Source: Stylophora pistillata (taxonomy: Eukaryota). Taken from it: a stretch of DNA of 64,000 bases. The translations under genes and the position numbers were made by a program. Numbering within the stretch: position 1 is the first letter of the stretch; each line of letters opens with the position of its first letter. The stretch covers positions 297,739 through 361,738 of the forward strand of contig NW_019217867.1 of NCBI RefSeq assembly GCF_002571385.2, written 5' to 3'. This document shows positions 11,501-63,800 of the stretch, in pieces. A model generated the notes under the pieces. It was not told the DNA's origin. It did not search any database and worked only from the letters and a program-made list of their open reading frames with translations.

Positions 11501-14500
11501 TAGGGGTAGAAATGTCTGGAAATTTCTCGGCTGGTACACCAGTTATTTTAATTAATCACAAAAGTATTTCGCGCGCTCTCTAAAGACTGAAGATTTCTTT
11601 ACCACAAAGAGATACTAAGTTTACAGTGGTAACGATTGAAATATTAATACAAAACTTATTATCGGAGAAATTAGGGTCCTAAAAGCGAGTAAAATTTGAA
11701 AATAAACACAGATACCGTTCAACAATAAGTCAGTCCCTATCACCTTAACTTTTAAAGCTGGAATGTTAGTTGAAAATTCAGAATCAAAGTTTTCCTCTCC
11801 TTTTTTTTTTTCAGATATTTCGTGGCAACAATGATCCCAACACAGTAGTAAAGAATTACCTCCGACATAATATAACAGCATTATGTGTACGTTTTTGGCC
11901 TGAAACGTATTATAATCGCCCTGGATTGAGAGTTGAGTTGTACGGCAGTAAAGGTGACTCAATTCATATTTTCACAACAAATTCAGTTTAGTTTAGTCAG
12001 AATCCAGTTCTTTGATAATTTTTGGGACTATTATAATGGCATCGTTGTCTCCAGGATAGCCATGAAAAGACGAGACTGTCATTCTTAGCGCCGTATGCCA
12101 TTCGTCCTCATTAGTTTCTAGATATACTGGTGGAAAGAGTCATCTGTGCGTAAAGCTTTACTATTCATATACTTAGCGCCAATCTTTCAAACCTTCAATT
12201 CTCATAAAAATCTTTTGAATTAGATTTGTAAGATGAGAGTTATGTCACATTTTCATCCTCCAATGCTCATCAATTACGCGGGATACCACAATAATAGGAT
12301 GTATAGACAAAATTTTCCTAAAGCCTTTTGTAAAATGTGCAGATGTTTGCCAAAACCCTCTTGGCGTGGAGAGCGGAGACTTATCCAATGTACAGTTCAC
12401 TGCATCGAGTCAATCACCAGCTGAAAGTGATGCCTGGAATGGTCGCTTAAACAAGGGGAAGGCCTGGTGCGCGGGAAGAAATGACGATAAACAGTATCTT
12501 CAAGTAGATTTAGGAAGAGTTTATACGGTAGCGCGAGTCGCCACCCAGGGTCATCCTGTCAATCTGCAGTGGGTGATCCGTTATGAAGTGGCTTACAGTA
12601 TGGACAACATATTTTGGAGGAAAGCTCTTGACGAAAGCAAGTCAAAGGTTGGATTTATGATTCATAATAGGTTCAATGATTCAGCACAGGAATAAAATAA
12701 GGACTAACAAACATCCTGGTTAAGAGAAGTATCTCTTGTGCAAGTGGGGTAGCACCGAGTCTAAAGTTTAGTGGTGTCCAACTTTTCTCTCTCTTGGCTC
12801 AGGTGAAAATATGTCTTGTCCAGTCTGACACTATATCTCTTTCCTTCTGTAACATTCTCCTCACTAGAAAATTAATTAACATTCAACGAAAAAAGTTATT
12901 AAATTGCATTAATTAAGACCCACGTTTCCATTCCCTTTATGAAAAGGAAGTTTTTGTCTTATTAATTCCGAATGGTGATGAAGGAGAAATATTATGATTC
13001 ATTAGCGTTTTACGTATCGCCTTACGTCTGCATGTTTTACAGACCCTGAGTGGCAATACAGATCACAACACGGCGAAGGAAGTCCAATTCTACAAACATG
13101 TAACGGGCAGATTCCTGAGATTCCTTCCTGTGGAGTGGAATGAAGCAATCTGCATGAGAGTAGAGGTCTACGGTTGTGAAGGTTCGTGATTCCTGAACAC
13201 AAAGTGGCTCAGTGGTTCGAATCCCGTAAAGGCCTGATTTTTTTTAGGTCTGATTTTCGCTATTGCATAAATAGCGCTCTCTACTGCGAGGATCGTGCAT
13301 CATACGTATGTTTCCGTATGTTACGCAAATTTCTGTTGAAAAGTAAGAGTCTTTTCCCGAGTCTTTTTTTCTGTTGTCTGTTTGGAAACTGCCTTTGCTT
13401 GAATTTCCACACAATGTGATGTGAAATACGAGCCCGAAGTACGTCCTGTATGTACATAAGGGCACATGATCACAATACAATTCCATTATCAGTAGATTAC
13501 GCACATTGCTTACAGTGCATCACGCCATAATCAATGGATGGCCGCTATTCATCTCAGTATCTATGAAAGCTATATCAAAACCTAACATTTAGAAACATTC
13601 CTGGCAATGCGTTTCCCCTAATTATAACAATAACAGTATTTAATGAGGGAACAGACCTGGCAAAAACGGTTTCAGTGGGGTCCCTCCAATTTTGCCGTTT
13701 CATCTGTTATGAATGATATATGATGTTGCTGGACTGTTGGTGTGAGCCAGCTCGATCACCGCGCGCAAACGGGACGCACCAAGAGTCTGATGGGTAACTT
13801 TTATTCGAGGCGATGGTCACTCTTTTCTTAATGACTCATTCAACCCTAAGCAGACGTTCTTAGATATCCTATCGGTAGGCGTGTGTGGACTTACGGGACT
13901 ACTGACCTCGGTTGATTAAATAAAGAAGACCGCTCGTTGAGGACTCTAGGCAAGGTCAGAAGAAAAATCCAAACACAATTGGCGATGGCAATTACTGTCC
14001 GAGAATGAAACCCTATTATAATGGTCAGGGGAAAAATCACTCAAAAGCAAAACTATATTTGTGGTCTTCGTCACATGACAAAACAAGGTTCAGAAGACTC
14101 GTATTAGGACTTCAAGATAACCTAACAAGCCTAAAAAATCCCAAACGCTTTTCCAGAACACTTCTAATTTTAGTAGTTCATCAGTGTCGTCACATTCCGC
14201 CCAATGACTTAATTACTTAGCGCATGTATTTCCAGAATGCGCACATCCAGTTGGTATTGAGCGTGGAGTGGTACCAAATCAAGCCTTTTCAGCCTCGTCA
14301 TGGTATGACGTGGACCATGAGCCTTGGCTGGCAAGACTCTACAGTAGAGACGGCGAGGGAGCCTGGTGCGCACTGGAAAATGATGGGAAACAGTACCTAC
14401 AGGTCGATCTGGCTCAAATACATATCATAACGGGCGTTGCTACTCAAGGAAAGTACGAAACATCTGAATGGGCAATTCGTTTCAGAGCTTGGGTGACAAA

Positions 14501-17500
14501 CTTTAGCTTATCTTTCACTGACGATCATATGCTTTGGGTTAACTACACTGAGGATGGAGTTTCTCCGAAGGTGAGCGTAACTTAGAAATCAAGATCAGAT
14601 TCAAAGATCCATACGAATATAATTTTTAGCAGATAAAATTATCAGCTGTGCTTTGTCTTTGATACCCCTGTCCTGTTTTCCCACATTAAAAAGTGCCATT
14701 CTTGTCTGATATCTGCGTGAAAAGAGAAGTCTGGCTCGTTATACTTGCAGATGCCTTGCAGAGGGGATTTCCTTTCTAGAAGAAAGAGTGTAGGAACAAT
14801 CTTGTATTTTCTAAAATAACATTTGCAAAGTAACTCTTTTTTTCAACCTTTTAGGTCTTTGATGGAAATTCACAGAGCATTCAAGTTATTCGACATACAC
14901 TTTTGAAAAGAATAACTTCTCGACAAATAAGGTTTCTTCCGGTTACGTGGTTTGGATGGACATGCATGCGGGTTGAAGTTTTTGGATGTAAAAGTTAGTA
15001 AGACGTTCTTGAACAAATTTAGTTAGAAGAGTGGGGCGGATTATTACTCCACCCAAAAGGCACCATGGGAGGCCTATATATGTATATCTATGGAACAAGA
15101 GACAAACATTCATGACAATTATTACAATGCCATGTCATTTTTTCATGCAAAAAAATCAAAACTCGTCTTGTTTCGTGGCAGATTACAAGCAAATTACAGT
15201 ACCTTGGTCCACAATAAAAATTGATTGTAACTTCACTGGCGATATAATTAGTTCAGATACATCTAATCGGAGTGGAGTTGACTCCAAAAAAAATAAAATG
15301 AATAGGAAAGACTCGAAAATAAGTATTAACTAGCATTTCAAATTATACTCTGGCTATAAAAGTGCCTGGTGGCCGGGCAATTTTTAAAGAATTTCCGTTA
15401 AGATTTTTTTTGACAAATCTCATGAGGATATAAATATTTGTTGAGAAAAATTTATGTTTTTTTTTTGGTTGATCTTCATTTTACTCAGCTTGCTCTTCTG
15501 CTATTGGCATGGAAGATTTTCACTGGCCATCTGAGTCGATTCTAGTTTCGTCCGTTAATTCTGGACATGATGCTGCAAAAGCCAGACTTTTCAATACATA
15601 CACATGGCTTCGAGGCCATAATGATAAGGACTCTTTTCTGCAAATTGGAAATGGCATAGATGAATAGCGCTTTACTGCTGTTGCAACTCAAGGCCACTCG
15701 ACCATAAAGTCTGCCGTGGTCAAATTCCAATTGTCTTTTTCCAGAGATGGTTTACATTGGTTTTACCACCGAGAGAATGGCGAAGTCAGGGTAAAGAAGT
15801 TTTTATTCCTCTATTTATTTTGTATCCTGGGGCTATATACGACGTGGGGCAGATAAATGTTTGTGATACGTAGGCTACGAAACCCAGTTAGTTTCATTGA
15901 CTGCGCTGATCATGATGAGAAGTCAAGGCTTTATAAAGATCCAGGCACTTCGTGATAACAATTCACGACCGTTTCCACGAAAACAGAGATATATCTAAAT
16001 CTTAATCATTTTATTTGATTTTATGATACTGTAGTTCAATGATATTTTGTCATTGGTATTTTTTTCCCATTAGTTCAAAATATTTTATTTTACTTTATTT
16101 TAGATGTTTATTGGGACGCCGCTCGTCAACACTGTGGCAAAACATTACCTTGAGCGGACTGTCACGGCAAGCTTCGTGCGCTTTTGGCCCAAAGAATGGG
16201 TTGGGAGACCCAATATGCGGGTTGAATTATACGGATGCCAGGGTTAGCTTTTATTTTTCTAGTTTATCACTCTAGTATTGATTATTAAAACTACAAGGTT
16301 GAATTCAGAGAATAACTCTCTTAGCTTTCCAGCATATTAGCTCCAAATTAAAAGCCTTTCCAAGATCTCCCAGCGAACCGACGATGCAAAATGTTCATGT
16401 CTTTCCAGCTGTACTTAGTTTCTTTCTTTAAACTTAATTCTAACAAAAGTTCATACAAATTAAGTAGGTGAATTTTTCTTTTCAGTGTACTCGAGATCTG
16501 TTGATTTCTCAAACCTGACTAGTATGGCAGACGGTTATCCTAATTTTTATACTTGCGACGGATCTGTTTTAACGCCCTGGCACGGACGTTTGGCGATACA
16601 CAACAACTCCCATGATGGCCCCGGATCAGCATGGTGTGCAAAAAGCAATGAAACAAACAACAACCAGTTCCTTCAAATAGATTTGAAAATGACCAAAGTT
16701 ATTCAGGCCATCGCAGTTCAATCTCATTTACCAGGGGACAAATGGGTGAAAACTTTTAGCATTAGTTCCAGTCTTGATGGGCTGTTTTGGAAGCAATACA
16801 CAGAATGGGGAAACGTGAAGGTGAGCTTAAACTGAAGAGAGCATCCAATGTCGTGACGGAAAGAGGTACTCGTGTAAACTTTCAAAAGTGATTTTCATAA
16901 TGCAGGTTACACCTAGCTGTTGTTTTAATAATAACAAGATTACAATACATTTCTCTTCAACAGAGTGAAAAATGTTGGTTTTCCATACCTGAGGAAATAT
17001 TGATTGGAAGTAACCGTATTATGTGATCCTCTGTATAGGTATTTAATGGGAACACACATCGACATAGTTTGGTCAAAGTGAGTATTAAATATAATCTCCG
17101 TGCAAGATATCTTCGTTTTCACCCAAAAACCTGGAACAACCACCCTTGTTTAAGGCTGGAAGTATTTGCTAAAGAAGGTAAGGAATCATGATTTATCACG
17201 AAGGCCATGAGCCACTCCTTGGTTTTTGAATTTTTATGGACCACAGCATCAAATGATCATTTATCAAGGAATAGTACAGTAAACTATGCCATATAGCTAC
17301 CTGTTTTACGCCCATTCGTACGTCGTTCTTCACGTGTTGATGCATGGTCCATCGTTATGAATACAGTGGACGTTCGTAGTAACTTCCCTTTGCCCCAGGA
17401 AATGGGAAAAAAGTGACTGCAGGTTGAAATTAGCACAGAACACAAATTTAACTTTTTGATCACTTTGTGTGATTACTTTGTTGTGGTCAGTGTTCTGTGA

Positions 17501-20500
17501 CTCTATCCATGTAAGCAGATATGAAGTGAGGATCGGAATTAATTTTTCTCTTGCAAGTGGAGAAGAACACGACACCGTAACTCCAATGTGTTAAACTGAC
17601 CATAATATGATACAAGTCTGACAGATATCTTGCCCTTCGGTGCCTTTTCTTTCCAGACTGCATTGATCCCCTGGGAATGGAGAGTGGTCAAATATCTGAT
17701 AAGGATATTACAGCGTCAAGTGCTTTGAGGGTGAATTACGAACCTTGGCTGGCCAGGTTGCACAGTCGGCTAGGAGAAGGTGGATGGTGTGCAGGGGTTT
17801 GTTGGCACTTTAAGCTTTCCTCATAAATAAAAGCTGGGTGTAATAGTCATGAGAAAATCAGGATCTCTTAGAATGATTGCTCTGGTAATTTTAGAGAATA
17901 CGTCGATTCTTGCCACCACAATCCCTTGCGTGATTATCATAGTTGATCGCAGCTGAATTTCTGAAAAGGACGAGTACCAAAGGAAACTTAGCTAGAATGA
18001 AACGAAAGGTGTAAAATGTTAGTTTAGGCCCGAACATGAGACAAAGGCAGATGGTAGACACCATTGAGTTTTGGAACCAATCTGTTGAATTCTCTGTTGA
18101 ATTGAATGCTCAGTCAATACGCCATAAGGAAGGCATTGGGGAGCCTTGCCATGAATTACAAATATGTCGACATAACTAGCGCAGATAGCCCATCTTATTC
18201 TGCTTTAATTTCTCTTTCACCGTTGATTTTCTTTTAAAATATCAATAGTTTTGCTAATACAATACAAGAGTCGGTGTCAAGGTCGAGAAACTCGATGTAT
18301 CATCATATTAATGTCTTCAGAGAAGCGATGAGAATCAATATTTGGAGGTTGATTTGAAACACCCGTACCACGTGAGACGAGTAGCAACGCAAGGAAAGTA
18401 TTCAGTACACGGATGTACTATCCAGGACGCATGGGTTACAAGCTACATGATGCAGTTCAGACGTGATTCACTGGACTGGTGGAACTACACCGAAAATAAC
18501 GCCATAAGGGTAAGGATCCCTTTGTTGCTATAGTTATACATCAGCAAGGACTGAATATAGTATCGTATAGCTCTTTTATTTGTCTTCTAATTCATGGAAG
18601 ATACTGTACTAATCCAATTAGATAAGTTGGTATTCATGTTGCCCTTACACCTTTGCCATNNNNNNNNNNNNNNNNNNNNNNNNNNNNNNNNNNNNNNNNN
18701 NNNNNNNNNNNNNNNNNNNNNNNNNNNNNNNNNNNNNNNNNNNNNNNNNNNNNNNNNNNNNNNNNNNNNNNNNNNNNNNNNNNNNNNNNNNNNNNNNNNN
18801 NNNNNNNNNNNNNNNNNNNNNNNNNNNNNNNNNNNNNNNNNNNNNNNNNNNNNNNNNNNNNNNNNNNNNNNNNNNNNNNNNNNNNNNNNNNNNNNNNNNN
18901 NNNNNNNNNNNNNNNNNNNNNNNNNNNNNNNNNNNNNNNNNNNNNNNNNNNNNNNNNNNNNNNNNNNNNNNNNNNNNNNNNNNNNNNNNNNNNNNNNNNN
19001 NNNNNNNNNNNNNNNNNNNNNNNNNNNNNNNNNNNNNNNNNNNNNNNNNNNNNNNNNNNNNNNNNNNNNNNNNNNNNNNNNNNNNNNNNNNNNNNNNNNN
19101 NNNNNNNNNNNNNNNNNNNNNNNNNNNNNNNNNNNNNNNNNNNNNNNNNNNNNNNNNNNNNNNNNNNNNNNNNNNNNNNNNNNNNNNNNNNNNNNNNNAG
19201 GGGATATCGCGACGTAAACGGTTAATAAATATCCTACTTCAAGTTTCCCAAAGAAAAACTCGCGAGAAAGCAATGGCTTCATGCAATCCGTCGAGAGGAA
19301 GGAAAAAGCTTCAAAGTCTTGGACTCAACCATGGTCTGCTCGCACCATTTTAAAATGGAAGACTTGAAGAAAAGTATTGCGGGCAAAATATGCCTTCAAA
19401 CCAATGCTGTACCTTCGGTATTTCAGTGGCGTACTTCGCTGCGCAAAAAAAGCCTCCACCTCAAAGATTCACTAGTAAAACAACTACTCATCAATCATTC
19501 AGGGATTTATTCATGGTGTGCACACTCGGAAAGCAGCGTAAATGATAAATCGAATGAACAGCTAGAGAGTCAGATTACAACTGTAGAACCTAATGAAAAG
19601 AATGTCGAAAATTAGGCAAAGACAAAAGATGTCGAAACTCAGACCGATTTGGTCGAGTCGAAGGATGCATGCATTCAGAGTGATCAGAGTGTTGTCGCGC
19701 TTGTGAAACAGTATGAAATGAGAATAGAAGAGCTCTAAAGAGAAATAGAAAGCATTTCAAAGAAGAATGAATGTTTAAAAAGTAGACTTTTTCTATTGAA
19801 AGATTTCGCGCCGACAATTCTGCTGTGTCCTGCTACACTTCGTTTCCTAACAACGCTATTTTAATGGAAATCTACAATTATCTAGACCCCAGAGCGTGTT
19901 ATATGATTGTTTTATTCCGCTCTGGTAAACAGAGGCATCTTCTGAAGTGAGTAGTTCCACATACTAGATTCAGAGAATTTGACGGGAACATGTCGTTTAG
20001 CGGCGGAGTGTGAACTTGTGTTGTTTGCCGAGCGCAGTTGTTTTCGTTTAGAATAAAGATTATTGGGATCAGGATCAATGATGTTTTTAACCTTTCCGCT
20101 CTTGATGTATTAAAGTATAAGAAATTAGGTCAATTTAAGTGTAAGTAATCACAATTGACAATTTTCTCAAGCAATCAAAACACCTCGAAGTACGCATCTT
20201 GTGCTCGAAACTAGCCTTGTCACAAGCTTGCTTTTGTCTTTAAACCTTTCGCTGGGTCACCTCTGCCCTTCAACCATAGTCTCAAGTCCTCAGTCTTGAA
20301 TTGTGAGAGATTTCTATCTCCTAAGGAAGCTCCAGGAATGTCATTTTCGGTTAAAAAGCTCGAGGAATTGTGAGAGTTTGTCTAGTCGCGTCGCCATGTG
20401 TTGCCCGGGTGGCCTCGCTTTCGTGAAATTATTCATAACCAGTCTCAGACCTCCATCAGATTTTCCGCCATTATGGCAAAGGTGTATGATGTTGTCATTT

Positions 20501-22674
20501 TTATTTTATGATAATTGCGACCAATTAGGGACCTTGAGCAGTCGGGACGGCAAGGCTGAGGACGAAGTCGGTTGAAAATTTTATATTCTTAGTTAGAATT
20601 TCGCGAATGGCTGGATGTGTTTACCTCCTCGTACTGCCCCACACCTCAACTTCAGTATAACGTATATTATATAAGTTGCGGTGAGTTCCAAATTGAAACT
20701 CAAGTGATTTGTCGTCGGGGTCTCCGTTCTTTCACGCATAGTTTTGGTGATTTCACGTTGTTGTTTTGCAGATGACTGCTAAGAATTGTACAAGGTTTTA
20801 AAACGCAGATGCTGAGTTATCCTTCTGCCCTTTAGATCTTCTGTTTTCCAGAGCCCTTGTTACTGGTAGGAACTATGCGTATCAACTCAAGTTAAAACCA
20901 GTAAAACAATCCATAAACAAAATTCTAGCATGGTTTTTTGGAGCCCCGAGTTGTCATTCCCTTGAGTTCTAGCTTAAATGGTTGGTAAATGCTCACTCTC
21001 CAGGGTGTTAACTTTGTTAGAATATATGGCATTACCGCAACAAAAACCTCAAAGTTTTTTTTATCTAAATTACTATTTAACCAATTTGTATGCAGGATTT
21101 CTCTGGAAATATCAATACCACCCATGTTGTCACTCATCATTTAAAGAACCCTGTCATTGGTCGCTATGTGAGATTTCGTCCTATAAACTGGTTCCGAAGA
21201 ATTTGCATGAGGGTAGAAATATATGGATGCAAAGGTATTTCTTCATATATTTTTAGTAATTAGATGAAACTCACTTCAAAGGCCAACTATATAGTTATTA
21301 TGGTCAGATTGCATTAGTTTCCTATGTCTTCCGTGTCGATAATTTTCTTGATTTTTATTAAGGGTTCACTACCTAGAGTACCTAAACTCAAACATTTTTA
21401 TTTTGTCCTTTATAGTGAATCATCATCAATTTGCGAGAAATTTCTGCGTGACACTGTCAAACTTGCGCGCTTACATTATCGCTTTAAAACCTTGCTTGCG
21501 AACAAAATTTCTGATTTGTCTTTAATCAGTTGAATTCTGAGAAATAATTCATAATTTATCAGCCGGATTTTATCTTATTGTTGTTGTTCAATACAAAATA
21601 GCTCAGGAAATTTCGGATCGGGTTAGTCTTGGGGTTTGTTTTGTTGTCTTTGCAAAAGCACATGAGACGCGAAGGAAAATTAATGGTCTAAGTACTGGCA
21701 GTTTGCAACTATGAATCAAAGCTCATATTAACTAATCCCCCGGAACCGGGCTGAGTGAATGTGTTTTGGCCCTCGATCTAAGTTGTGCGGGCCAAGCTAA
21801 AGCAAGATTCGTGCTGCCACTTGCTAACACTCTCACAGTGTGGCAATCGCTTGGATAGTGAGATATATTTAAAGTCTGTGATATTATGGAACCTTTCTAG
21901 CTCACTCTAAAGCTAAAATAGCCGTTGCTATTGAAATAAGCAACATTATATTTATTCCTTCCGGACCGCCTCAAAACTTTTTCAATGTACTAACTCACCC
22001 AAGCATGTCTATCTATATAGTCTTTCCAATTAGATTCTTAAAGAATAAGCAGAAGTAATAATAATAATAATAATAATAATAATGATAATAATAATAATAT
22101 ATTGATATAGCTCTTTGGCATACAAAGCTCTGCTTTCATGTCCAAATTGAGCACTGTGGGATGAGTCATCGCCGCTAGCATTGTGCATAGCTCACTAGGC
22201 TCTTCTAGTTTGAGCACTCTGGCATGGCTTAGACGATACCACAAATGTGGGATCGTTCGGGGTAACCATATCGGTTCTCTCCCATCCTAGCATCAGCACT
22301 GCACTGATGAGGCCCAGAAGGCCGAAACAGTACTGTCTGCAGTTAGTTATATACATATATATATTTTTAAATGATATAATAACTTTATTTCAAAACTTAA
22401 AACATTACAATAACTTCGCGTAGGTAATGGTTTTTCCTCTCGTACATTTCCAAATTAATTGATACGGAACACATCTGTTAAATTCGGTTCTCTAGGATCA
22501 GACTCGTATCAGACCCAAACTAACTTTGATAACAAAAACGACCTACATATAAAAATCGCGAAAGCAACTACTAGTTCGTATTAAAAGAATTTCAAAAAAC
22601 GTGCATCGAAATTACCCTTAAGAAAGTAAATTACATTAAAAAAATATAGGAGAAGGGAAATGACACTCTTAATC

Positions 22675-22706
<32 letters not shown>

Positions 22707-25700
22707 TAATAATAATAATGATAATAATAATACCTGGTACTCACCCGACAGGCCTAAGCCTATGTATGCGGTTTATATAGCGTCATATAAGGAACCGCGC
22801 AGCCAGTCAGATTGCTGGAAACTCTTTGCTCAGCTCTGAAATTCTACTAAATACATATATTATATCCTGGTACACTTTGACTAGGGTTTGCCCGCAATGA
22901 TGTTGATGTGTACACTGAATTATTTTACCAATAAAGTCTACCTTAATAATAGTGTCGAAACTAATGATAACTACAACAGTGATATTTACAGTGATATTTA
23001 GACTTTTTTATCGTTTCTCCTTCTCATCTGCAGCTTGTTTCCAACCTTTGGGAATGGAAGACTTCTCAATACCGAGCAAGAACGTTGATTCTTCTGTAGC
23101 CTCAAACATATACAACGTAAGACTGAACTATGCACAAAGAAACCAGTTCGTCGGAGGTATGTTACGATTCAGTCACTTATTAGTGACTTTTCCTTGTGTG
23201 CCATTTCTTTTCTTGTTCTTACTCCTTTCTAACGTCATCTGTGATCTATTACTGTACAGCCGCATAGCAATATGGAGGCTATTTTACCAATGGATGGCAA
23301 ATGTTTTTTCTCAGAAGTCACTTTCTTTTCGTTAGGGAACTTAAGTTCACAAACCTTGATGGTTTCAGTTAGTTTTCATACCTACTCGTCTCACTTCTTC
23401 TTCATTAATCCTATAGAGAATGATACATGGGCGTGTGTAGATATGGAATTTCTTTTCGAGTGTTCAACCTCATGGCTCACGAGTGAGACATCGAGTTGAG
23501 CGCGATTTTGATTTCCAAAAGGAATTCTACATAATTGTTTTTGTTGTTGAATAAACATAGTAGGCCTTTATTGACAAGAAAAGTTGGCTTTTATTAATGA
23601 ATGAAAAAAAGGTACCACAATCTGCGGAAAAAAAATTCGTAAAGTGTTGTGAAGTTGTCTATTTTCGTCAGTTCTCAGCCAGGAGAAATGCTATTGCCAA
23701 ACTGTTGGTTTTTTCATAAGTATTTTGGTTTTCTTCAGCTTCTCGAACATTTTGAACGTCACTGCATGTCTGTAAGCGATGCGAATTCTTCAGCGTTGTT
23801 AGCAGCGACAATCCGAGAAAATTTCGATAAACTACCTCGGATTGGGCATAGTGAAGGCTTTCCCATTGATTTACAAACCTGACAAAGTGGCGCGAAGGCG
23901 AGTGACGTGTCAGCAGCTGATTGGCGATGTACAACAAGTGAAAAAGTATCGTAATTCTAACGTGTTCCAATTACGGCTTTTCTAAGGGCTGTAAATCCTT
24001 GTAAAACACAACAGTTTAAATGGTAATACATTTCATATCCACGTGTATTAGCAAGTAGATAAACGAAAAATCGATTATTCCAAGAATCTCTTTGTTCAAA
24101 ATTAGTATTTCTGGACCTTCTCCGTCCGAATGAAATTAGTACATTACATTCAAGTAAGTTTTCATGCTTTTCCTCTTTTTAAAGAATACTGTCTCTTCGT
24201 TCCAGGGCGAGACAAATTTATCTTACAGATCGACTTAGGGCATTTTAAGACTGTCGCTGCAGTCGCTACACAAGGCAGATATCGTGGATCGCATTTTGTT
24301 AGAATCTATCGACTGGCGTTTAGCAGACTTGAGGGTGAATGGTTTTATTACAAAGAAAATGGAGAAGTAAAGGTACCTCACGCCTCATTTTTGAATAACA
24401 GTCATCAAAGTTGCTTCTGTTAGGGCCAATTATGCGTCTGAGAACTTTCATATTCAAAAATGAATCGCCAAATGCGAAGTGATTATTGTTAATTAAATTC
24501 AGTCTGAAAAACTCCACATATCCTTTTTTGAAAAGAGTCACGCCAAAGTTGGTAGCATATTTTGTGCTCTCCAGAATTGAATTTTTCTCTATCACGTTTA
24601 TCATCACTTCCTCAGAAGCATTGACAAAAATGCGAGGCAGTCATTTGGAAATTCAGCACGCCTGCTATAATCAGCTAGCGCGAGGTGAATAGCGAGATCA
24701 TTCCTCGACCAATCAGAGCGCGCACATCTTTAAATCATCGCAACAAATATAATTATTTTTATTCTTTATGTAAAAATCACCTTTCAATCAACTGTTTTTC
24801 TATAAAGGAAATACAAGGCAACACTAATGCTGACGGAACAGTTCTAAAAATCCTGCATTATCAAGTTGTCGCCCGTTATGTCCGTTTTGTGGCAGTAGAG
24901 TGGGTCGATAATGTTTGCTTGAGGGTGGAAATTTACGGTTGCGAAGGTAAATTTACCTGGACGAGTTGTTTTTGTTTCATTCTCTCAGTTTGATTTTTTT
25001 TCCAATTTATCGGTAAAAAATGAACTTGTTTGGTACAATTCTAACCCTAATTCCATAATTTTCATACACTCGAGTACAGGAAAGGCGTAATAAACTCAAT
25101 GTCTGTCTTGTGTATTGATCATTAATTTTTAAAGAATCGAAACAATGTCTCATCTGAAAAAAAGTACTTGGAGGTCATTCTCACCAACTTAGTGAAGAAA
25201 CCTCAGTTTATCTGTAGAAAAGAAAAAATAAGGCGAGAGAGAGAGAAAGAAAGAAGGAGGCGCGCGCACGCGAGAGAGAGAGATCGGCAGTTGAATTGGG
25301 ATGGGAGAAAAAATTTTTTTCACAGTGGTAGTATTAATATCTCTATACTATAATCTTAGCCTGGTCAGATCCCCTTGGAATAGGATCAGGATTAATAAGC
25401 AAAAGCAAAATGACCTCATCCAGTACCTCAGGACCTGGGCATGAGCCATGGTTGGCAAAATTAAATACTGTGTTTGATACCATGGGCTGGTGTGCTGCCC
25501 CTTCTGATACATCACCTTACCTCCAGATAAACATGGGACGAGTTGTATCTCTAACCCAAATCGCGGTGACAGGAAAGAGCGGTAAAGGAATGGTGTGGAA
25601 ATTTAAGTTTTCTTTAAGCGTCGATGGTGGCTTCTGGCGCATTTATAAGACAGTCTCTGGAGAAAAGGTGAGTAACTTAGTTTAGTACTTACTCTCCTCA

Positions 25701-61215: not shown

Positions 61216-61699
61216 TTTGCGAGGATAACAATTGCGACAGCCTAAGCAGTTTCTGGTTTTCAACCGTTTTTTTATGATTTTGGGTGCACTGCCTGTTAAC
61301 AGAGGTATTTTGATAGGGCCGGGGTCCACAGTACTTCAGTTTTTTTGTATTCGACGAAGTTGAAAAGTGAGACGTATTCTGCCATCTTGGCCGCTAAATA
61401 ATTGTTTAGTTCATGGAGGATCTTTCCAATACTGCCGCCCCAAATTATTCGGGTTCTTTGTGCGCATTGGGAGACTGTGCCTTCTGTTTTGAAAACCACC
61501 CGAGATTGCAGGCCGAGGGCTTTATTCAAGATCTCGGGTACATTTCTCCGTATAGGGACCTCTCGGCCTGTAAATAAAACATGTTTATTGTTGCCAGTAG
61601 TGAAACAAAATTTCTTGAACAGATTGGTGTGAACTTTTAAAGATGTTTAAAAATGGAAAAAGTGTAGTCAGGATATGTCATGAGTTTTATAGAAATTGG

Positions 61700-63800
61700 T
61701 TGCCTCTGACTGTTGTTATTTCTGAAACAGACGTTTCGGCTAATGCTTAAGCCTTCATCAGTGATATGAAAACTGAAGATCGTTATCATACGCTATTTAA
61801 AGTTAAAAACGTGACGCGAAGCTTGCGCGCGTAACTATGTATTTGATGCTCGCGCGAGGTCTTTATAGGCTTCTGGAAGTACGATGTGATCGTTCCCCGC
61901 ATTCGGATCCAAAGTAGAGTACCAGGCTTCAAGGAAAAGTCTCTCGTGGTAATTAGTTTCGAAACGAACGACCCTGACGTTTATGAAATCCATGTTTTGG
62001 TCGAAAAGGTGGACATGGCTTGCGACTTTGGAGTTTAAGTCAAAACCTGCAACTGCCTTTTTGTGCTCCGCAATTCTGGTCTTTAATGATCGTTCTGTTT
62101 GGCCATAGTACTTAAAATTACACTGTGTGCAATTGATTTTGTACACCATGCCTGACTTCTGGCGGTCAGGTTCGCCTAGCTCCTTGGAGCGTGGAAGAAG
62201 GCTGTTGACTGTTTGTTGGGGTCTGTAGGCTACTTTGACCTTTTCTTGTTTCAATATGCGACTTATTTTCTCGGAAACACCCTGTACATACGGCAGCACT
62301 ACAAAGCCATTGAAGTTGGTCTGGGCGGGTTGTTTAAATAACACTCTCTCACAGTTCTGTACAAAAGGCAATGGATAATTGTTATCTCGCAGAACGGCCT
62401 TTACTCGTTGTATTTCTTCCCGTCTGCCTTTATTGGTAGATGGAATGTTGTTTGCTCTTTTCAGTAAGGTGTTGACAACGGATCTTTTATGCCACATAGG
62501 ATGACAGGAAAAGAAATCGAGATAAGGGTCGTTATGTGTCGGTTTTCTGTAAACATCTACCTGAATTTTTGTGCCGAGTTTACTTGTTATGGTGTCTAAA
62601 AAAGGCAAGCCTTGTCCGTTGGTGTTTTCTAATTCTAAAGTAAACTGTATGTTCGGGTTAATTGAGTTCAATTGTTTGTGGAAATTGTCGACTTGATCCT
62701 TTTTGATACAAGAGTGACTATCGTCAACATACCTAAACCACCATTTGGGAGGGCACGGGAACGTGGAGATCGTCGTTTCCTCAATTTCTTCCATAATCAG
62801 GTCGGCTAAAACAAGACTAATGGGAGAACCCATTGCGCATCCAAAAATCTGTTTGTAGTGGTCGCCATCATATTTAAATTAATTGTGGTTGAGGACAAAT
62901 TCTGAACTGAGTCTCAAAACGTTGTCAACAGAAAGATTGGTACGTTCTGCTAGATTCTGGTCTCGTTGTAGTCTCTCCTTGGTTATCGTGAGGGCTAAGT
63001 CCACAGGTATGGAGGTGAACAGGGACTTCACGTCGAAGGAGATCATGACTTCATCGCTGGAGATGGAAAGCTTNTTTTATTTGTTGCGTGAAAACGGAAC
63101 TGTTTTGGACTGTGTAGGTTTTCTTTCTCAGAGGTGACAGGACTGAAACTAGATATTTGGAGACCGCATGTGTCGGGCTACCGATACTGCTAGTGATGGG
63201 TCGCAATGGCCTTCCAGGTTTATGAACTTTCGGAAGACCGTAAAAAGACGCTGGCGTTGAATTACCGCAGTGTAGTTTTCTGTATAAACTTGGGCCAATT
63301 CGCGGTGCTGTGCCGTTATTCTCGTTTTTGATAGGAGGATTTTGTTAAGATCTTTTTCAACACTTGTTGTGGGTTTCAATCTCTTATCGGTCAATTTCAG
63401 GTAGGTTTTGGTGTCGTTTAATAAAACGGCTACTTTCTCTTTGTCTCATCACTATCCATCACAACTATGGATCTTCCTTTATCGGCTGGAAGGATCTTCA
63501 CAGTCTCATCCTTTCTCAGGTTTTGTAGCGCATTCTCCTGCTCTTTCGTTATATTGGCTGTCGTGTGTACTTTGCAGTTCTTAAGAATATTAGTAACAGA
63601 AACGCGTATTGTGTCTTTTAAAAATGTGGCTGATTCTTTTCTTTTCAGGTTGCAATTATTTACTCGTGTTCAAAGAGTTTACAAAGTGTGCTTTTCTCCT
63701 ACTTGCCCCTGCTCCTTACCGACGAACTAAAATTGGAAAACGTGAGTGAAATTTGTCAATTATTTTCTGGGTTTGAAAGTTTGAATACTGAAAGTCATAC
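61700..63800 (-). mobile_element. Penelope-like retroelement (RT plus GIY-YIG endonuclease); 3' 332 codons open, upstream part frameshifted
   Basis: [78 protein letters not shown]. Confidence 0.92.
61728..61763 (-). ncRNA. Minimal hammerhead ribozyme in the Penelope 3' terminal repeat
   Basis: The minus strand reads CA-CTGATGA-A-GGCT-TAAGCATT-AGCC-GAAA-CGTC-TG, about 70 nt after the ORF stop. Confidence 0.7.

What the first reader, a model, noticed from the sequence alone, without database searches (positions are those of the whole stretch)
22102..22344. Intronic retrozyme-like monomer whose hammerhead stem I extends only on circularisation
Seen: a textbook type I hammerhead (6-bp stem I ACTGCA/TGCAGT, CTGATGA, GGCC/GGCC stem II, GAAA, palindromic stem III ACAGTACTGT, GUC site at 22335-22337) at the 3' end of a ~240-nt non-coding island between (TAA)n and (TA)n. 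The island starts TTGATATAG and ends TGCAGTT. Joining end to start gives TGCAGTTGATATAG, which pairs with the upstream CTAGCATCAGCACTGCA (ACTGCA/TGCAGT, then ATCA/TGAT, then CTA/TAG with small bulges). Established: non-LTR retrozymes of animals are 150-400-nt hammerhead-bearing units that yield circular RNAs. Inference: this is an integrated unit-length copy of a circular or multimeric RNA. It lies in sense within an intron of the discoidin gene, so it could cleave that pre-mRNA.
Basis: partly seen in the sequence, partly recalled or inferred. Interest (0 to 1): 0.8.

Follow-up and report, generated by a model that had tools for sequence, protein, structure and literature searches.

The report
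Known coral retrozyme, solo intronic copy
This is one stranded, single-unit copy of a small mobile repeat with a self-cutting hammerhead ribozyme that is already described in stony corals; it sits in an intron of a discoidin-domain gene and is ordinary for this genome.

Summary
The hammerhead is real and fully intact (window 22298-22343, cleavage after C22337). The ~242-bp island (22104-22345) is one copy of a repeat with at least 783 first-look matches in this 397-Mb coral genome.

The head-to-tail junction GTC|TGCAGTTA|GATATAGCTC occurs 454 times, in tandem arrays of 244-245 bp period.

The family is the published stony-coral non-LTR retrozyme (Cervera & de la Peña 2020, PMC7229834). Their Acropora millepora clone has a near-identical ribozyme and junction, and their primer 108R matches the window with no mismatch. 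That paper already shows fast self-cleavage and circular RNA. This scan has also met the family before on other DNA of this genome (s1-771612, s1-771606).

The copy lies in sense in intron 21236-23032 of a multi-discoidin gene. It has only one ribozyme and lacks the distal stem I partner, so it cannot make a circle, and cleavage of the pre-mRNA is untested.

One extra observation: 19 of 27 insertions begin within 14 nt downstream of the ribozyme cleavage site, and 3' ends abut TA-rich DNA.

The parts
22104..22345 (+). One unit (242 bp) of the coral non-LTR retrozyme, non-coding. The G at 22346 is the first base of a 'next' unit, and TT at 22102-22103 may be the remnant of ...GTTA.
   Evidence: 92-97% identical full-length copies elsewhere in the genome begin at GATATAG and end at TGCAGTTA(G). 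Published primer 108R matches 22206-22232 with 0 mismatches.
22298..22343 (+). Type I hammerhead ribozyme: stem I ACUGCA/UGCAGU, core CUGAUGA, stem II GGCC-CAGAA-GGCC, GAAA, short palindromic stem III, GUC.
   Evidence: Sequence. Rfam alignment to a hammerhead model, 24.6 bits. Identical to the commonest dispersed-copy hammerhead sequence.
22337..22338 (+). Predicted self-cleavage site (after C22337; the 3' product would start UGCAGUUAG).
   Evidence: Position of GUC relative to the core. The cleavage site is marked at the same place in the published A. millepora clone. The 5' ends of genomic insertions pile up from this position onward.
22289..22294 (+). 5' strand of distal stem I (AGC, AUC). 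It pairs with GAU/GCU at the start of the next unit (equivalent to 22104-22106 and 22110-22112) only in a tandem or circular context.
   Evidence: Constrained fold and duplex energies, -11.9 against -7.4 kcal/mol. The array subfamily has AUU here, which keeps a G-U pair.
22056..22103 (.). 5' flank: (TAA)n microsatellite then TATATT. Part of the AT-rich target.
   Evidence: A target-site duplication cannot be proven in this low-complexity DNA.
22346..22370 (.). 3' flank: G + TTATATACATATATATATTTTT, the family's usual TA-rich 3' junction.
   Evidence: CTGTCTGCAGTTAG|TTATA occurs 217 times in the genome. Flanks of 50 insertions.
21236..23032 (+). Host intron (GT...AG) of a multi-discoidin (F5/8 type C) gene, with the element in sense orientation.
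   Evidence: Exon ORFs hit PF00754. Donor AAAG|GTATT is at 21235/21236 and acceptor TCTGCAG|C at 23032/23033. Repeated discoidin exons run from 14 to 31.5 kb on the + strand.

Best explanation
Window 22104-22345 is a solo, unit-length, retrotransposed copy of the stony-coral (Acropora-type) non-LTR retrozyme. This is a ~242-bp non-coding repeat whose RNA carries a type I hammerhead. In tandem loci, transcripts are cut by successive hammerheads after GUC into monomers that host ligases can circularise; this step is published, not shown here. These RNAs are then copied back into TA-rich or microsatellite DNA by a borrowed reverse transcriptase, most likely from a Penelope-like element (inferred). 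This copy landed in an AT-rich microsatellite inside an intron of a multi-discoidin gene, in sense. It has a consensus-perfect hammerhead but only one cleavage site, and it lacks the next-unit sequence that closes distal stem I. It therefore cannot release a monomer or a circle. It is most likely an inert passenger that at most nicks the intron RNA.
For: Copies and arrays:
- At least 783 first-look matches; 40 scored at 92-97% identity.
- 454 exact head-to-tail junctions and arrays of 244-245 bp period.
- Insertions consist of a full unit, often preceded by a 5'-truncated unit.
- Target-site duplications are visible where flanks are complex: L006 TTATTTATC, L011 ACTACAA, L025 (TACA)n.
- The 3' end TGCAGTTAG|TTATA occurs 217 times.

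Link to the published family:
- The published A. millepora clone Amil224 carries a near-identical hammerhead and the junction GTC|TGCAGTTAGATATAGCTCTTTGG. That paper reports repeats of about 225 and 245 bp, kobs of about 0.8 per min, and circular RNA by northern blot and RT-PCR.
- Primer 108R matches the window exactly.

Other support:
- Sequencing runs holding the stretch are labelled coral.
- RNA reads of the family exist in two raw RNA runs.
- The partial-tandem geometry and (TA)n bias are the published Penelope-like insertion signature, and a Penelope-like element lies in the same window.
- 19 of 27 insertion 5' ends start within 14 nt after the cleavage site (p 4e-18).
Against: - No gathering-level Rfam hit.
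- A target-site duplication for this copy cannot be shown in low-complexity flanks.
- The reads gave only 2 RNA junction reads and no pile-up of ends at the cleavage site. The tool masked 22339-22450, and about half of the + oriented reads came from one other locus. In vivo cleavage and circles are therefore not shown here.
- The Penelope-like family in the window does not share the retrozyme's 3' end or its TA targeting, so the helper is unidentified.
Confidence: 0.92

Rival explanations
1. The copy has been co-opted as an intronic ribozyme that lowers output of the discoidin gene by cutting the nascent pre-mRNA before splicing, like the mammalian CPEB3 or HH9/HH10 intronic ribozymes.
For: The core is consensus-perfect while many sister copies carry core mutations. 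It lies in sense, about 700 nt upstream of the 3' splice site. The related coral ribozyme cleaves at about 0.8 per min. There is a precedent for an intronic ribozyme competing with splicing (PMC10919898 abstract).
Against: It is one of hundreds of dispersed copies, and 92-97% identity to them implies a fairly recent neutral insertion. The distal stem I that supports the loop-loop contact is lost in this context. There is no evidence of conservation or of cleavage at this locus.
Confidence: 0.04
2. It is a fragment of the pseudo-LTR of an autonomous Penelope-like element rather than a separate non-autonomous element.
For: Penelope-like elements carry hammerheads in their pseudo-LTRs and insert with partial tandem copies. 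A preprint derives animal retrozymes from such pseudo-LTRs.
Against: No reverse-transcriptase or GIY-YIG ORF adjoins this copy or the sampled copies. The arrays consist purely of 242-245-bp units. The Penelope-like family in the window has a different 3' end and a different, minimal hammerhead-like core.
Confidence: 0.03
3. It is plain satellite DNA spread by DNA-level processes, and the hammerhead is a relic without a role in spreading.
For: Long homogeneous arrays exist.
Against: Dispersed single units have unrelated flanks, constant 3' ends, variably truncated 5' ends and target-site duplications. This is a retrotransposition pattern. The 5' ends pile up just after the ribozyme cut site.
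Confidence: 0.01

Closest known systems
Acropora millepora / stony-coral non-LTR retrozyme (Cervera & de la Peña 2020, NAR 48:5054, PMC7229834; clone Amil224)
   Same: Near-identical type I hammerhead, the same cleavage site and junction sequence, and the same unit size class (about 225/245 bp). Tandem arrays are present. Primer 108R matches exactly.
   Different: Only local sequence divergence in the spacer and loop 2 (CAGAA here, AGAAA in the clone), plus one base fewer in distal stem I. The window locus is a solo unit, not a tandem.
Plant LTR retrozymes (Cervera et al. 2016, PMC4918200)
   Same: Non-autonomous retroelements whose hammerhead-cut RNA circularises.
   Different: Plants use type III hammerheads inside LTRs, with PBS/PPT, 4-bp target-site duplications, 600-1000 nt circles and Gypsy helpers. 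None of these applies here.
Amphibian satellite 2 / axolotl retrozymes and Schistosoma Sm-alpha hammerheads
   Same: Type I hammerhead in short tandem repeats, with a short palindromic stem III.
   Different: Amphibian motifs need dimers for good cleavage. The coral motif cleaves efficiently as a single motif according to the paper.
Penelope-like elements (Craig et al. 2021, PMC8557442)
   Same: Insertion geometry of a full copy preceded by a truncated copy, (TA)n microsatellite bias, and occasional inverted pairs. Such elements are present in this window.
   Different: The retrozyme has no ORF. The local Penelope-like family shares neither the 3' end nor the target preference.
Mammalian intronic ribozymes (Rfam HH9/HH10; CPEB3 HDV-like ribozyme, PMC10919898)
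   Same: A self-cleaving motif in sense in an intron.
   Different: Those are single-copy and conserved across species. This is a recent copy of a mobile repeat, and the Rfam HH9 score is far under the gathering threshold.

Membership tests
Metazoan non-LTR retrozyme (coral family) | Type I hammerhead with intact catalytic core (CUGANGA / GAAA / RUH) and three helices | tested here: met
Metazoan non-LTR retrozyme (coral family) | Non-coding unit of about 150-450 bp occurring as head-to-tail tandem copies in the genome | tested here: met
   242-bp unit; 454 exact junctions; arrays of at least 12 units. The window locus itself is a single unit.
Metazoan non-LTR retrozyme (coral family) | No LTRs, PBS or PPT; target-site duplications, when present, longer than 4 bp | tested here: met
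   Homology stops at unit boundaries with unrelated flanks. Target-site duplications of 7-11 bp are seen in L006, L011 and L025. PBS/PPT were not searched for explicitly. A target-site duplication for the window copy is unprovable in low-complexity flanks.
Metazoan non-LTR retrozyme (coral family) | Sequence homology to the published coral retrozyme | tested here: met
   Primer 108R matches with 0 mismatches at 22206-22232. The hammerhead and junction of clone Amil224 were read against the window by eye.
Metazoan non-LTR retrozyme (coral family) | Expressed as monomeric linear and circular RNA | tested here: inconclusive
   Family reads are present in RNA runs X21 and X24, with 2 junction reads. 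The junction zone was masked and many reads come from embedded copies. Shown experimentally for A. millepora.
Metazoan non-LTR retrozyme (coral family) | Self-cleavage at the predicted site | not testable with these tools
   Published kobs of about 0.8 per min for the homologous motif. Indirect support here: insertion 5' ends begin at the site.
Metazoan non-LTR retrozyme (coral family) | Co-occurrence with Penelope-like elements | tested here: met
   ORF with the YVDD motif of reverse transcriptases (no RT domain hit in Pfam) and a weak, sub-threshold GIY-YIG Pfam hit at 61835-62833 (-), with at least 137 first-look matches in the genome
Rfam Hammerhead_HH9 (RF02275) | Score at or above the curated gathering threshold (52 bits) | tested here: not met
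   24.6 bits and no gathering hit. Not filed as HH9; the hit only shows the generic hammerhead architecture.

The most novel reading that the evidence does not exclude
The insertion anatomy records the template. The 5' ends of 19 of 27 insertions start in the 14 nt from the first base after the ribozyme cut (U of UGCAGUUAG) onward, with none in the 28 nt before it. The 3' ends lie inside UUAGAUAUAG next to TA-rich DNA. This would mean that hammerhead-processed monomers are what gets reverse-transcribed, primed by microhomology between a nicked (TA)n target and the UUAGAUAUA motif 5-13 nt past the cut site. The template could be a linear monomer with end-to-end template jumping, or a circle copied once round. 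I did not find this mechanistic detail in the papers I read.
Probability: 0.4. Interest if true: 0.4.

Novelty: already known. Interest (0 to 1): 0.15.

Why it matters
It matters little for this locus. The family, its ribozyme activity and its circular RNAs are published, and solo monomers are the expected dead-end offspring of active arrays. The case does show that a blind reader can recognise a retrozyme from sequence alone. The one piece with some value beyond annotation is the family-wide pattern of insertion ends. If confirmed on all copies, it would give genomic evidence that ribozyme-cut RNA is the retrotransposition template, and it would point to a (TA)n-targeting helper.

Tried and rejected
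- **Rfam at gathering thresholds:** nothing in the whole window.
0 hits in the genome, so I replaced it with TGCAGTTA|GATATAG.
- **Unconstrained MFE folds:** they do not recover the hammerhead. The circular unit gave z = -2.2 only, so I used constrained folds.
- **Reads:**
  - The tool masked 22339-22450, so ends at the cleavage site and most junction reads could not be scored.
  - An RNA-specific haplotype that looked like editing or RNA replication turned out to be a single genomic locus, C189 at about 90.9 kb. That reading is rejected.
- **The Penelope-like element in the window as helper:** its copies end ...CCATTTTTAAACAT in varied, non-(TA)n flanks and share no 3' end with the retrozyme. 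Its hammerhead-like core gets no Rfam hit.
- **Metagenome scan for orthologous hammerheads, to test covariation:** 0 hits.
- **Fetching 80 more insertions selected by their 3' end:** The 5'-end statistic therefore rests on 27 insertions.
- **Compensatory changes in the stems:** none seen. Dispersed copies only show random decay.

Full report
**1. Observation**

The sequence at 22298-22343 (+) reads ACUGCA / CUGAUGA / GGCC-CAGAA-GGCC / GAA / ACAG-UA-CUGU / C / UGCAGU. All conserved hammerhead core positions are present. GUC is at 22335-22337, so cleavage is predicted after C22337.

Stems II and III are closed by loops and stem I is open, which makes it a type I motif. Stem III can form only 3 bp with a GUAC loop.

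- The core pattern occurs twice in the window, against 0.27 expected.
- Rfam gives no gathering-level hit in the window.
- A local scan aligns the whole motif to a hammerhead model (HH9, 24.6 bits against a gathering score of 52, E 7e-4).
- The motif ends a ~242-bp non-coding island between (TAA)n and TA-rich DNA. It is the only copy in the window.

**2. It is a repeat with tandem and permuted copies**

A search of the window's own genome (397 Mb, 5513 contigs) gave 783 first-look candidates. The 40 that were scored were 92-97% identical.

Most copies span GATATAG...TGCAGTTA(G), exactly like the window copy. Many are preceded, head-to-tail, by a 5'-truncated unit that starts at variable positions.

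- The junction GTCTGCAGTTAGATATAGCTC occurs 454 times and 0 times in the reversed control. It forms arrays of 244-245 bp period with at least 12 units, including one array on the window's own contig.
The unit is therefore 22104-22345 and the junction is TGCAGTTA|GATATAG.
- Two subfamilies exist. Dispersed, mostly solo copies are 92-97% identical to the window copy. Array units are 87-89% identical.

**3. Identity**

Cervera & de la Peña (2020, PMC7229834) described this family in Acropora millepora and eleven other stony corals. They report:
- tandem repeats of 220-240 bp, with major variants of about 225 and 245 bp;
- canonical type I hammerheads;
- co-transcriptional kobs of about 0.8 per min;
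- linear and circular RNAs shown by northern blot and RT-PCR.

Their clone Amil224 (Supplementary Table 2) contains ...CCTAGCTATCAGCACTGCACTGATGAGGCC-AGAAA-GGCCGAAACAGTACTGTC|TGCAGTTAGATATAGCTCTTTGG.... This is the same ribozyme, the same cut site and the same junction as here, apart from the loop 2 sequence (AGAAA there, CAGAA here) and one extra base in the distal strand.

Their degenerate primer 108R matches window 22206-22232 with no mismatch, with 0 matches expected by chance. Runs that hold the stretch are labelled 'coral metagenome' or a coded organism.

Earlier notes of this scan (s1-771612, s1-771606) reached the same identification on other pieces of this genome. I reached it independently from the paper.

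**4. Stem I extension**

I fixed the canonical helices and folded the motif in two contexts.

- In the junction context, stem I continues past a small internal loop (AGC / UA). AUC 22292-22294 pairs with GAU, and AGC 22289-22291 pairs with GCU of the next unit. The duplex energy is -11.9 kcal/mol.
- In the solo genomic context only the 6-bp proximal helix remains plus a marginal extension (3 further predicted pairs in the duplex fold, none in the constrained fold), at -7.4 kcal/mol.

The array subfamily has AUU instead of AUC, which keeps a G-U pair.

It is the normal architecture of a type I hammerhead whose loop 1 lies in stem I, as the paper draws it. No compensatory changes were seen. Dispersed copies show random hits in core and stems, which is neutral decay, while the window copy is consensus-perfect.

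**5. How it inserted**

*3' ends.* These are nearly constant...TGCAGTTAG|TTATATA occurs 217 times exactly, alongside ...TGCAGTTA|TATATA and ...TTAG|ATATATA. The boundary therefore lies inside UUAGAUAUAG and abuts TA-rich or microsatellite DNA.

*Target-site duplications.* Where flanks are complex, duplications of 7-11 bp are visible (L006, L011, L025).

*5' ends.* Of 27 informative insertions, 19 start in the 14-nt zone from the first base after the cleavage site to position 8 of the unit. A twentieth lies 2 nt before that zone, where the flank makes the boundary ambiguous. Apart from that one, none start in the 28 nt before the site. The rest are scattered (binomial p 4e-18 against a uniform phase).

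The sampling favours insertions of at least one unit, but it does not favour any phase among them.

*Inference.* The template's 5' end is usually the hammerhead cleavage product. Priming uses microhomology between a nicked TA-rich target and UUAGAUAUA just past the cut site. The template would then be either a linear monomer with end-to-end template jumps or a circle copied about once.

The geometry of a full copy preceded by a truncated copy, together with the (TA)n bias, is the published signature of Penelope-like elements, Naiad and Neptune in particular (PMC8557442). A 2026 preprint argues that animal retrozymes derive from Penelope-like pseudo-LTRs, and it finds Hydra and Naiad elements in A. 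millepora.

A Penelope-like ORF lies at 61835-62833 (-) in this window; it carries a YVDD reverse-transcriptase motif and gives a weak GIY-YIG hit. Its family ends ...CCATTTTTAAACAT in varied flanks and shares nothing with the retrozyme's 3' end. The helper is therefore not identified.

**6. Host context**

The + strand from about 14 to 31.5 kb carries repeated F5/8 type C (discoidin) exons. The exon that ends ...EIYGCK has a donor AAAG|GTATT at 21235/21236. The next exon starts after TCTGCAG| at 23033.

The element therefore lies in an intron of about 1.8 kb, in sense, with the cut site about 700 nt upstream of the acceptor. An intronic ribozyme can reduce host mRNA if it cuts before splicing, as in the CPEB3 precedent (PMC10919898 abstract).

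Here the copy has lost the distal stem I partner, it is one of hundreds of such copies, and nothing shows cleavage at this locus. With a single cut site it cannot release a monomer or a circle.

**7. Reads**

Two raw RNA runs of the species gave 719 and 260 family reads over 22102-22341. The tool masked 22339-22450, so ends at the cut site and most junction reads could not be scored. Only 2 RNA reads with a head-to-tail junction were listed.

A haplotype carried by about half of the + oriented RNA reads, and nearly absent from DNA contigs, looked like editing. It matches a single genomic locus, C189 at about 90.9 kb. That locus is a 1.65-mer with a dead upstream hammerhead and a 6-nt insertion in stem III of the downstream one.

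Much of the RNA signal therefore comes from copies embedded in other transcripts. In vivo cleavage and circles are not shown by my data and rest on the published experiments.

**8. Verdict**

The element belongs to a family that is already described in detail, and this scan has met it before. The window copy is an ordinary solo insertion.

Noticed in passing
window 61640-62833 (-): Penelope-like element: a 332-aa ORF with a YVDD reverse-transcriptase motif and a weak GIY-YIG hit. A hammerhead-like core (CTGATGA...GAAAC GTC) lies at 61733-61761, about 75 nt after the stop. The family has at least 137 first-look matches, and copies end ...CCATTTTTAAACAT at about 61643. The core gets no Rfam hit and I could not draw a convincing stem I.
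   Followed up: partly
window 31689-31940, both strands: Near-identical short ORFs on opposite strands ending ...NEMLYIKQLTPSLNVQTDSIRAKVFV. They look like GIY-YIG endonuclease tails of an inverted pair of Penelope-like fragments.
   Followed up: no
L061:1313-1712 (G000:C189, about 90.7-91.1 kb): A 1.65-unit retrozyme copy that supplies about half of the + oriented RNA reads of the family in two runs. Its upstream hammerhead has lost the cleavage site and the 3' strand of stem I. Its downstream hammerhead has a 6-nt insertion that lengthens stem III, and a mismatch in stem II.
   Followed up: partly
G000:C81:577655-577967 and G000:C236:120058-120141: Pairs of retrozyme 3' ends in opposite orientation, 65-300 bp apart. 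They resemble the inverted-copy insertions typical of Penelope-like elements.
   Followed up: no
window 14000-31500 (+): A long gene made of many repeated F5/8 type C (discoidin) domains, each split over two or three exons. An N gap lies at about 18660-19210 inside it.
   Followed up: partly
G000:C84:292141-292159 (-): Another retrozyme 3' end with the same TTATA flank lies 5.6 kb before the start of the window, in the opposite orientation.
   Followed up: no
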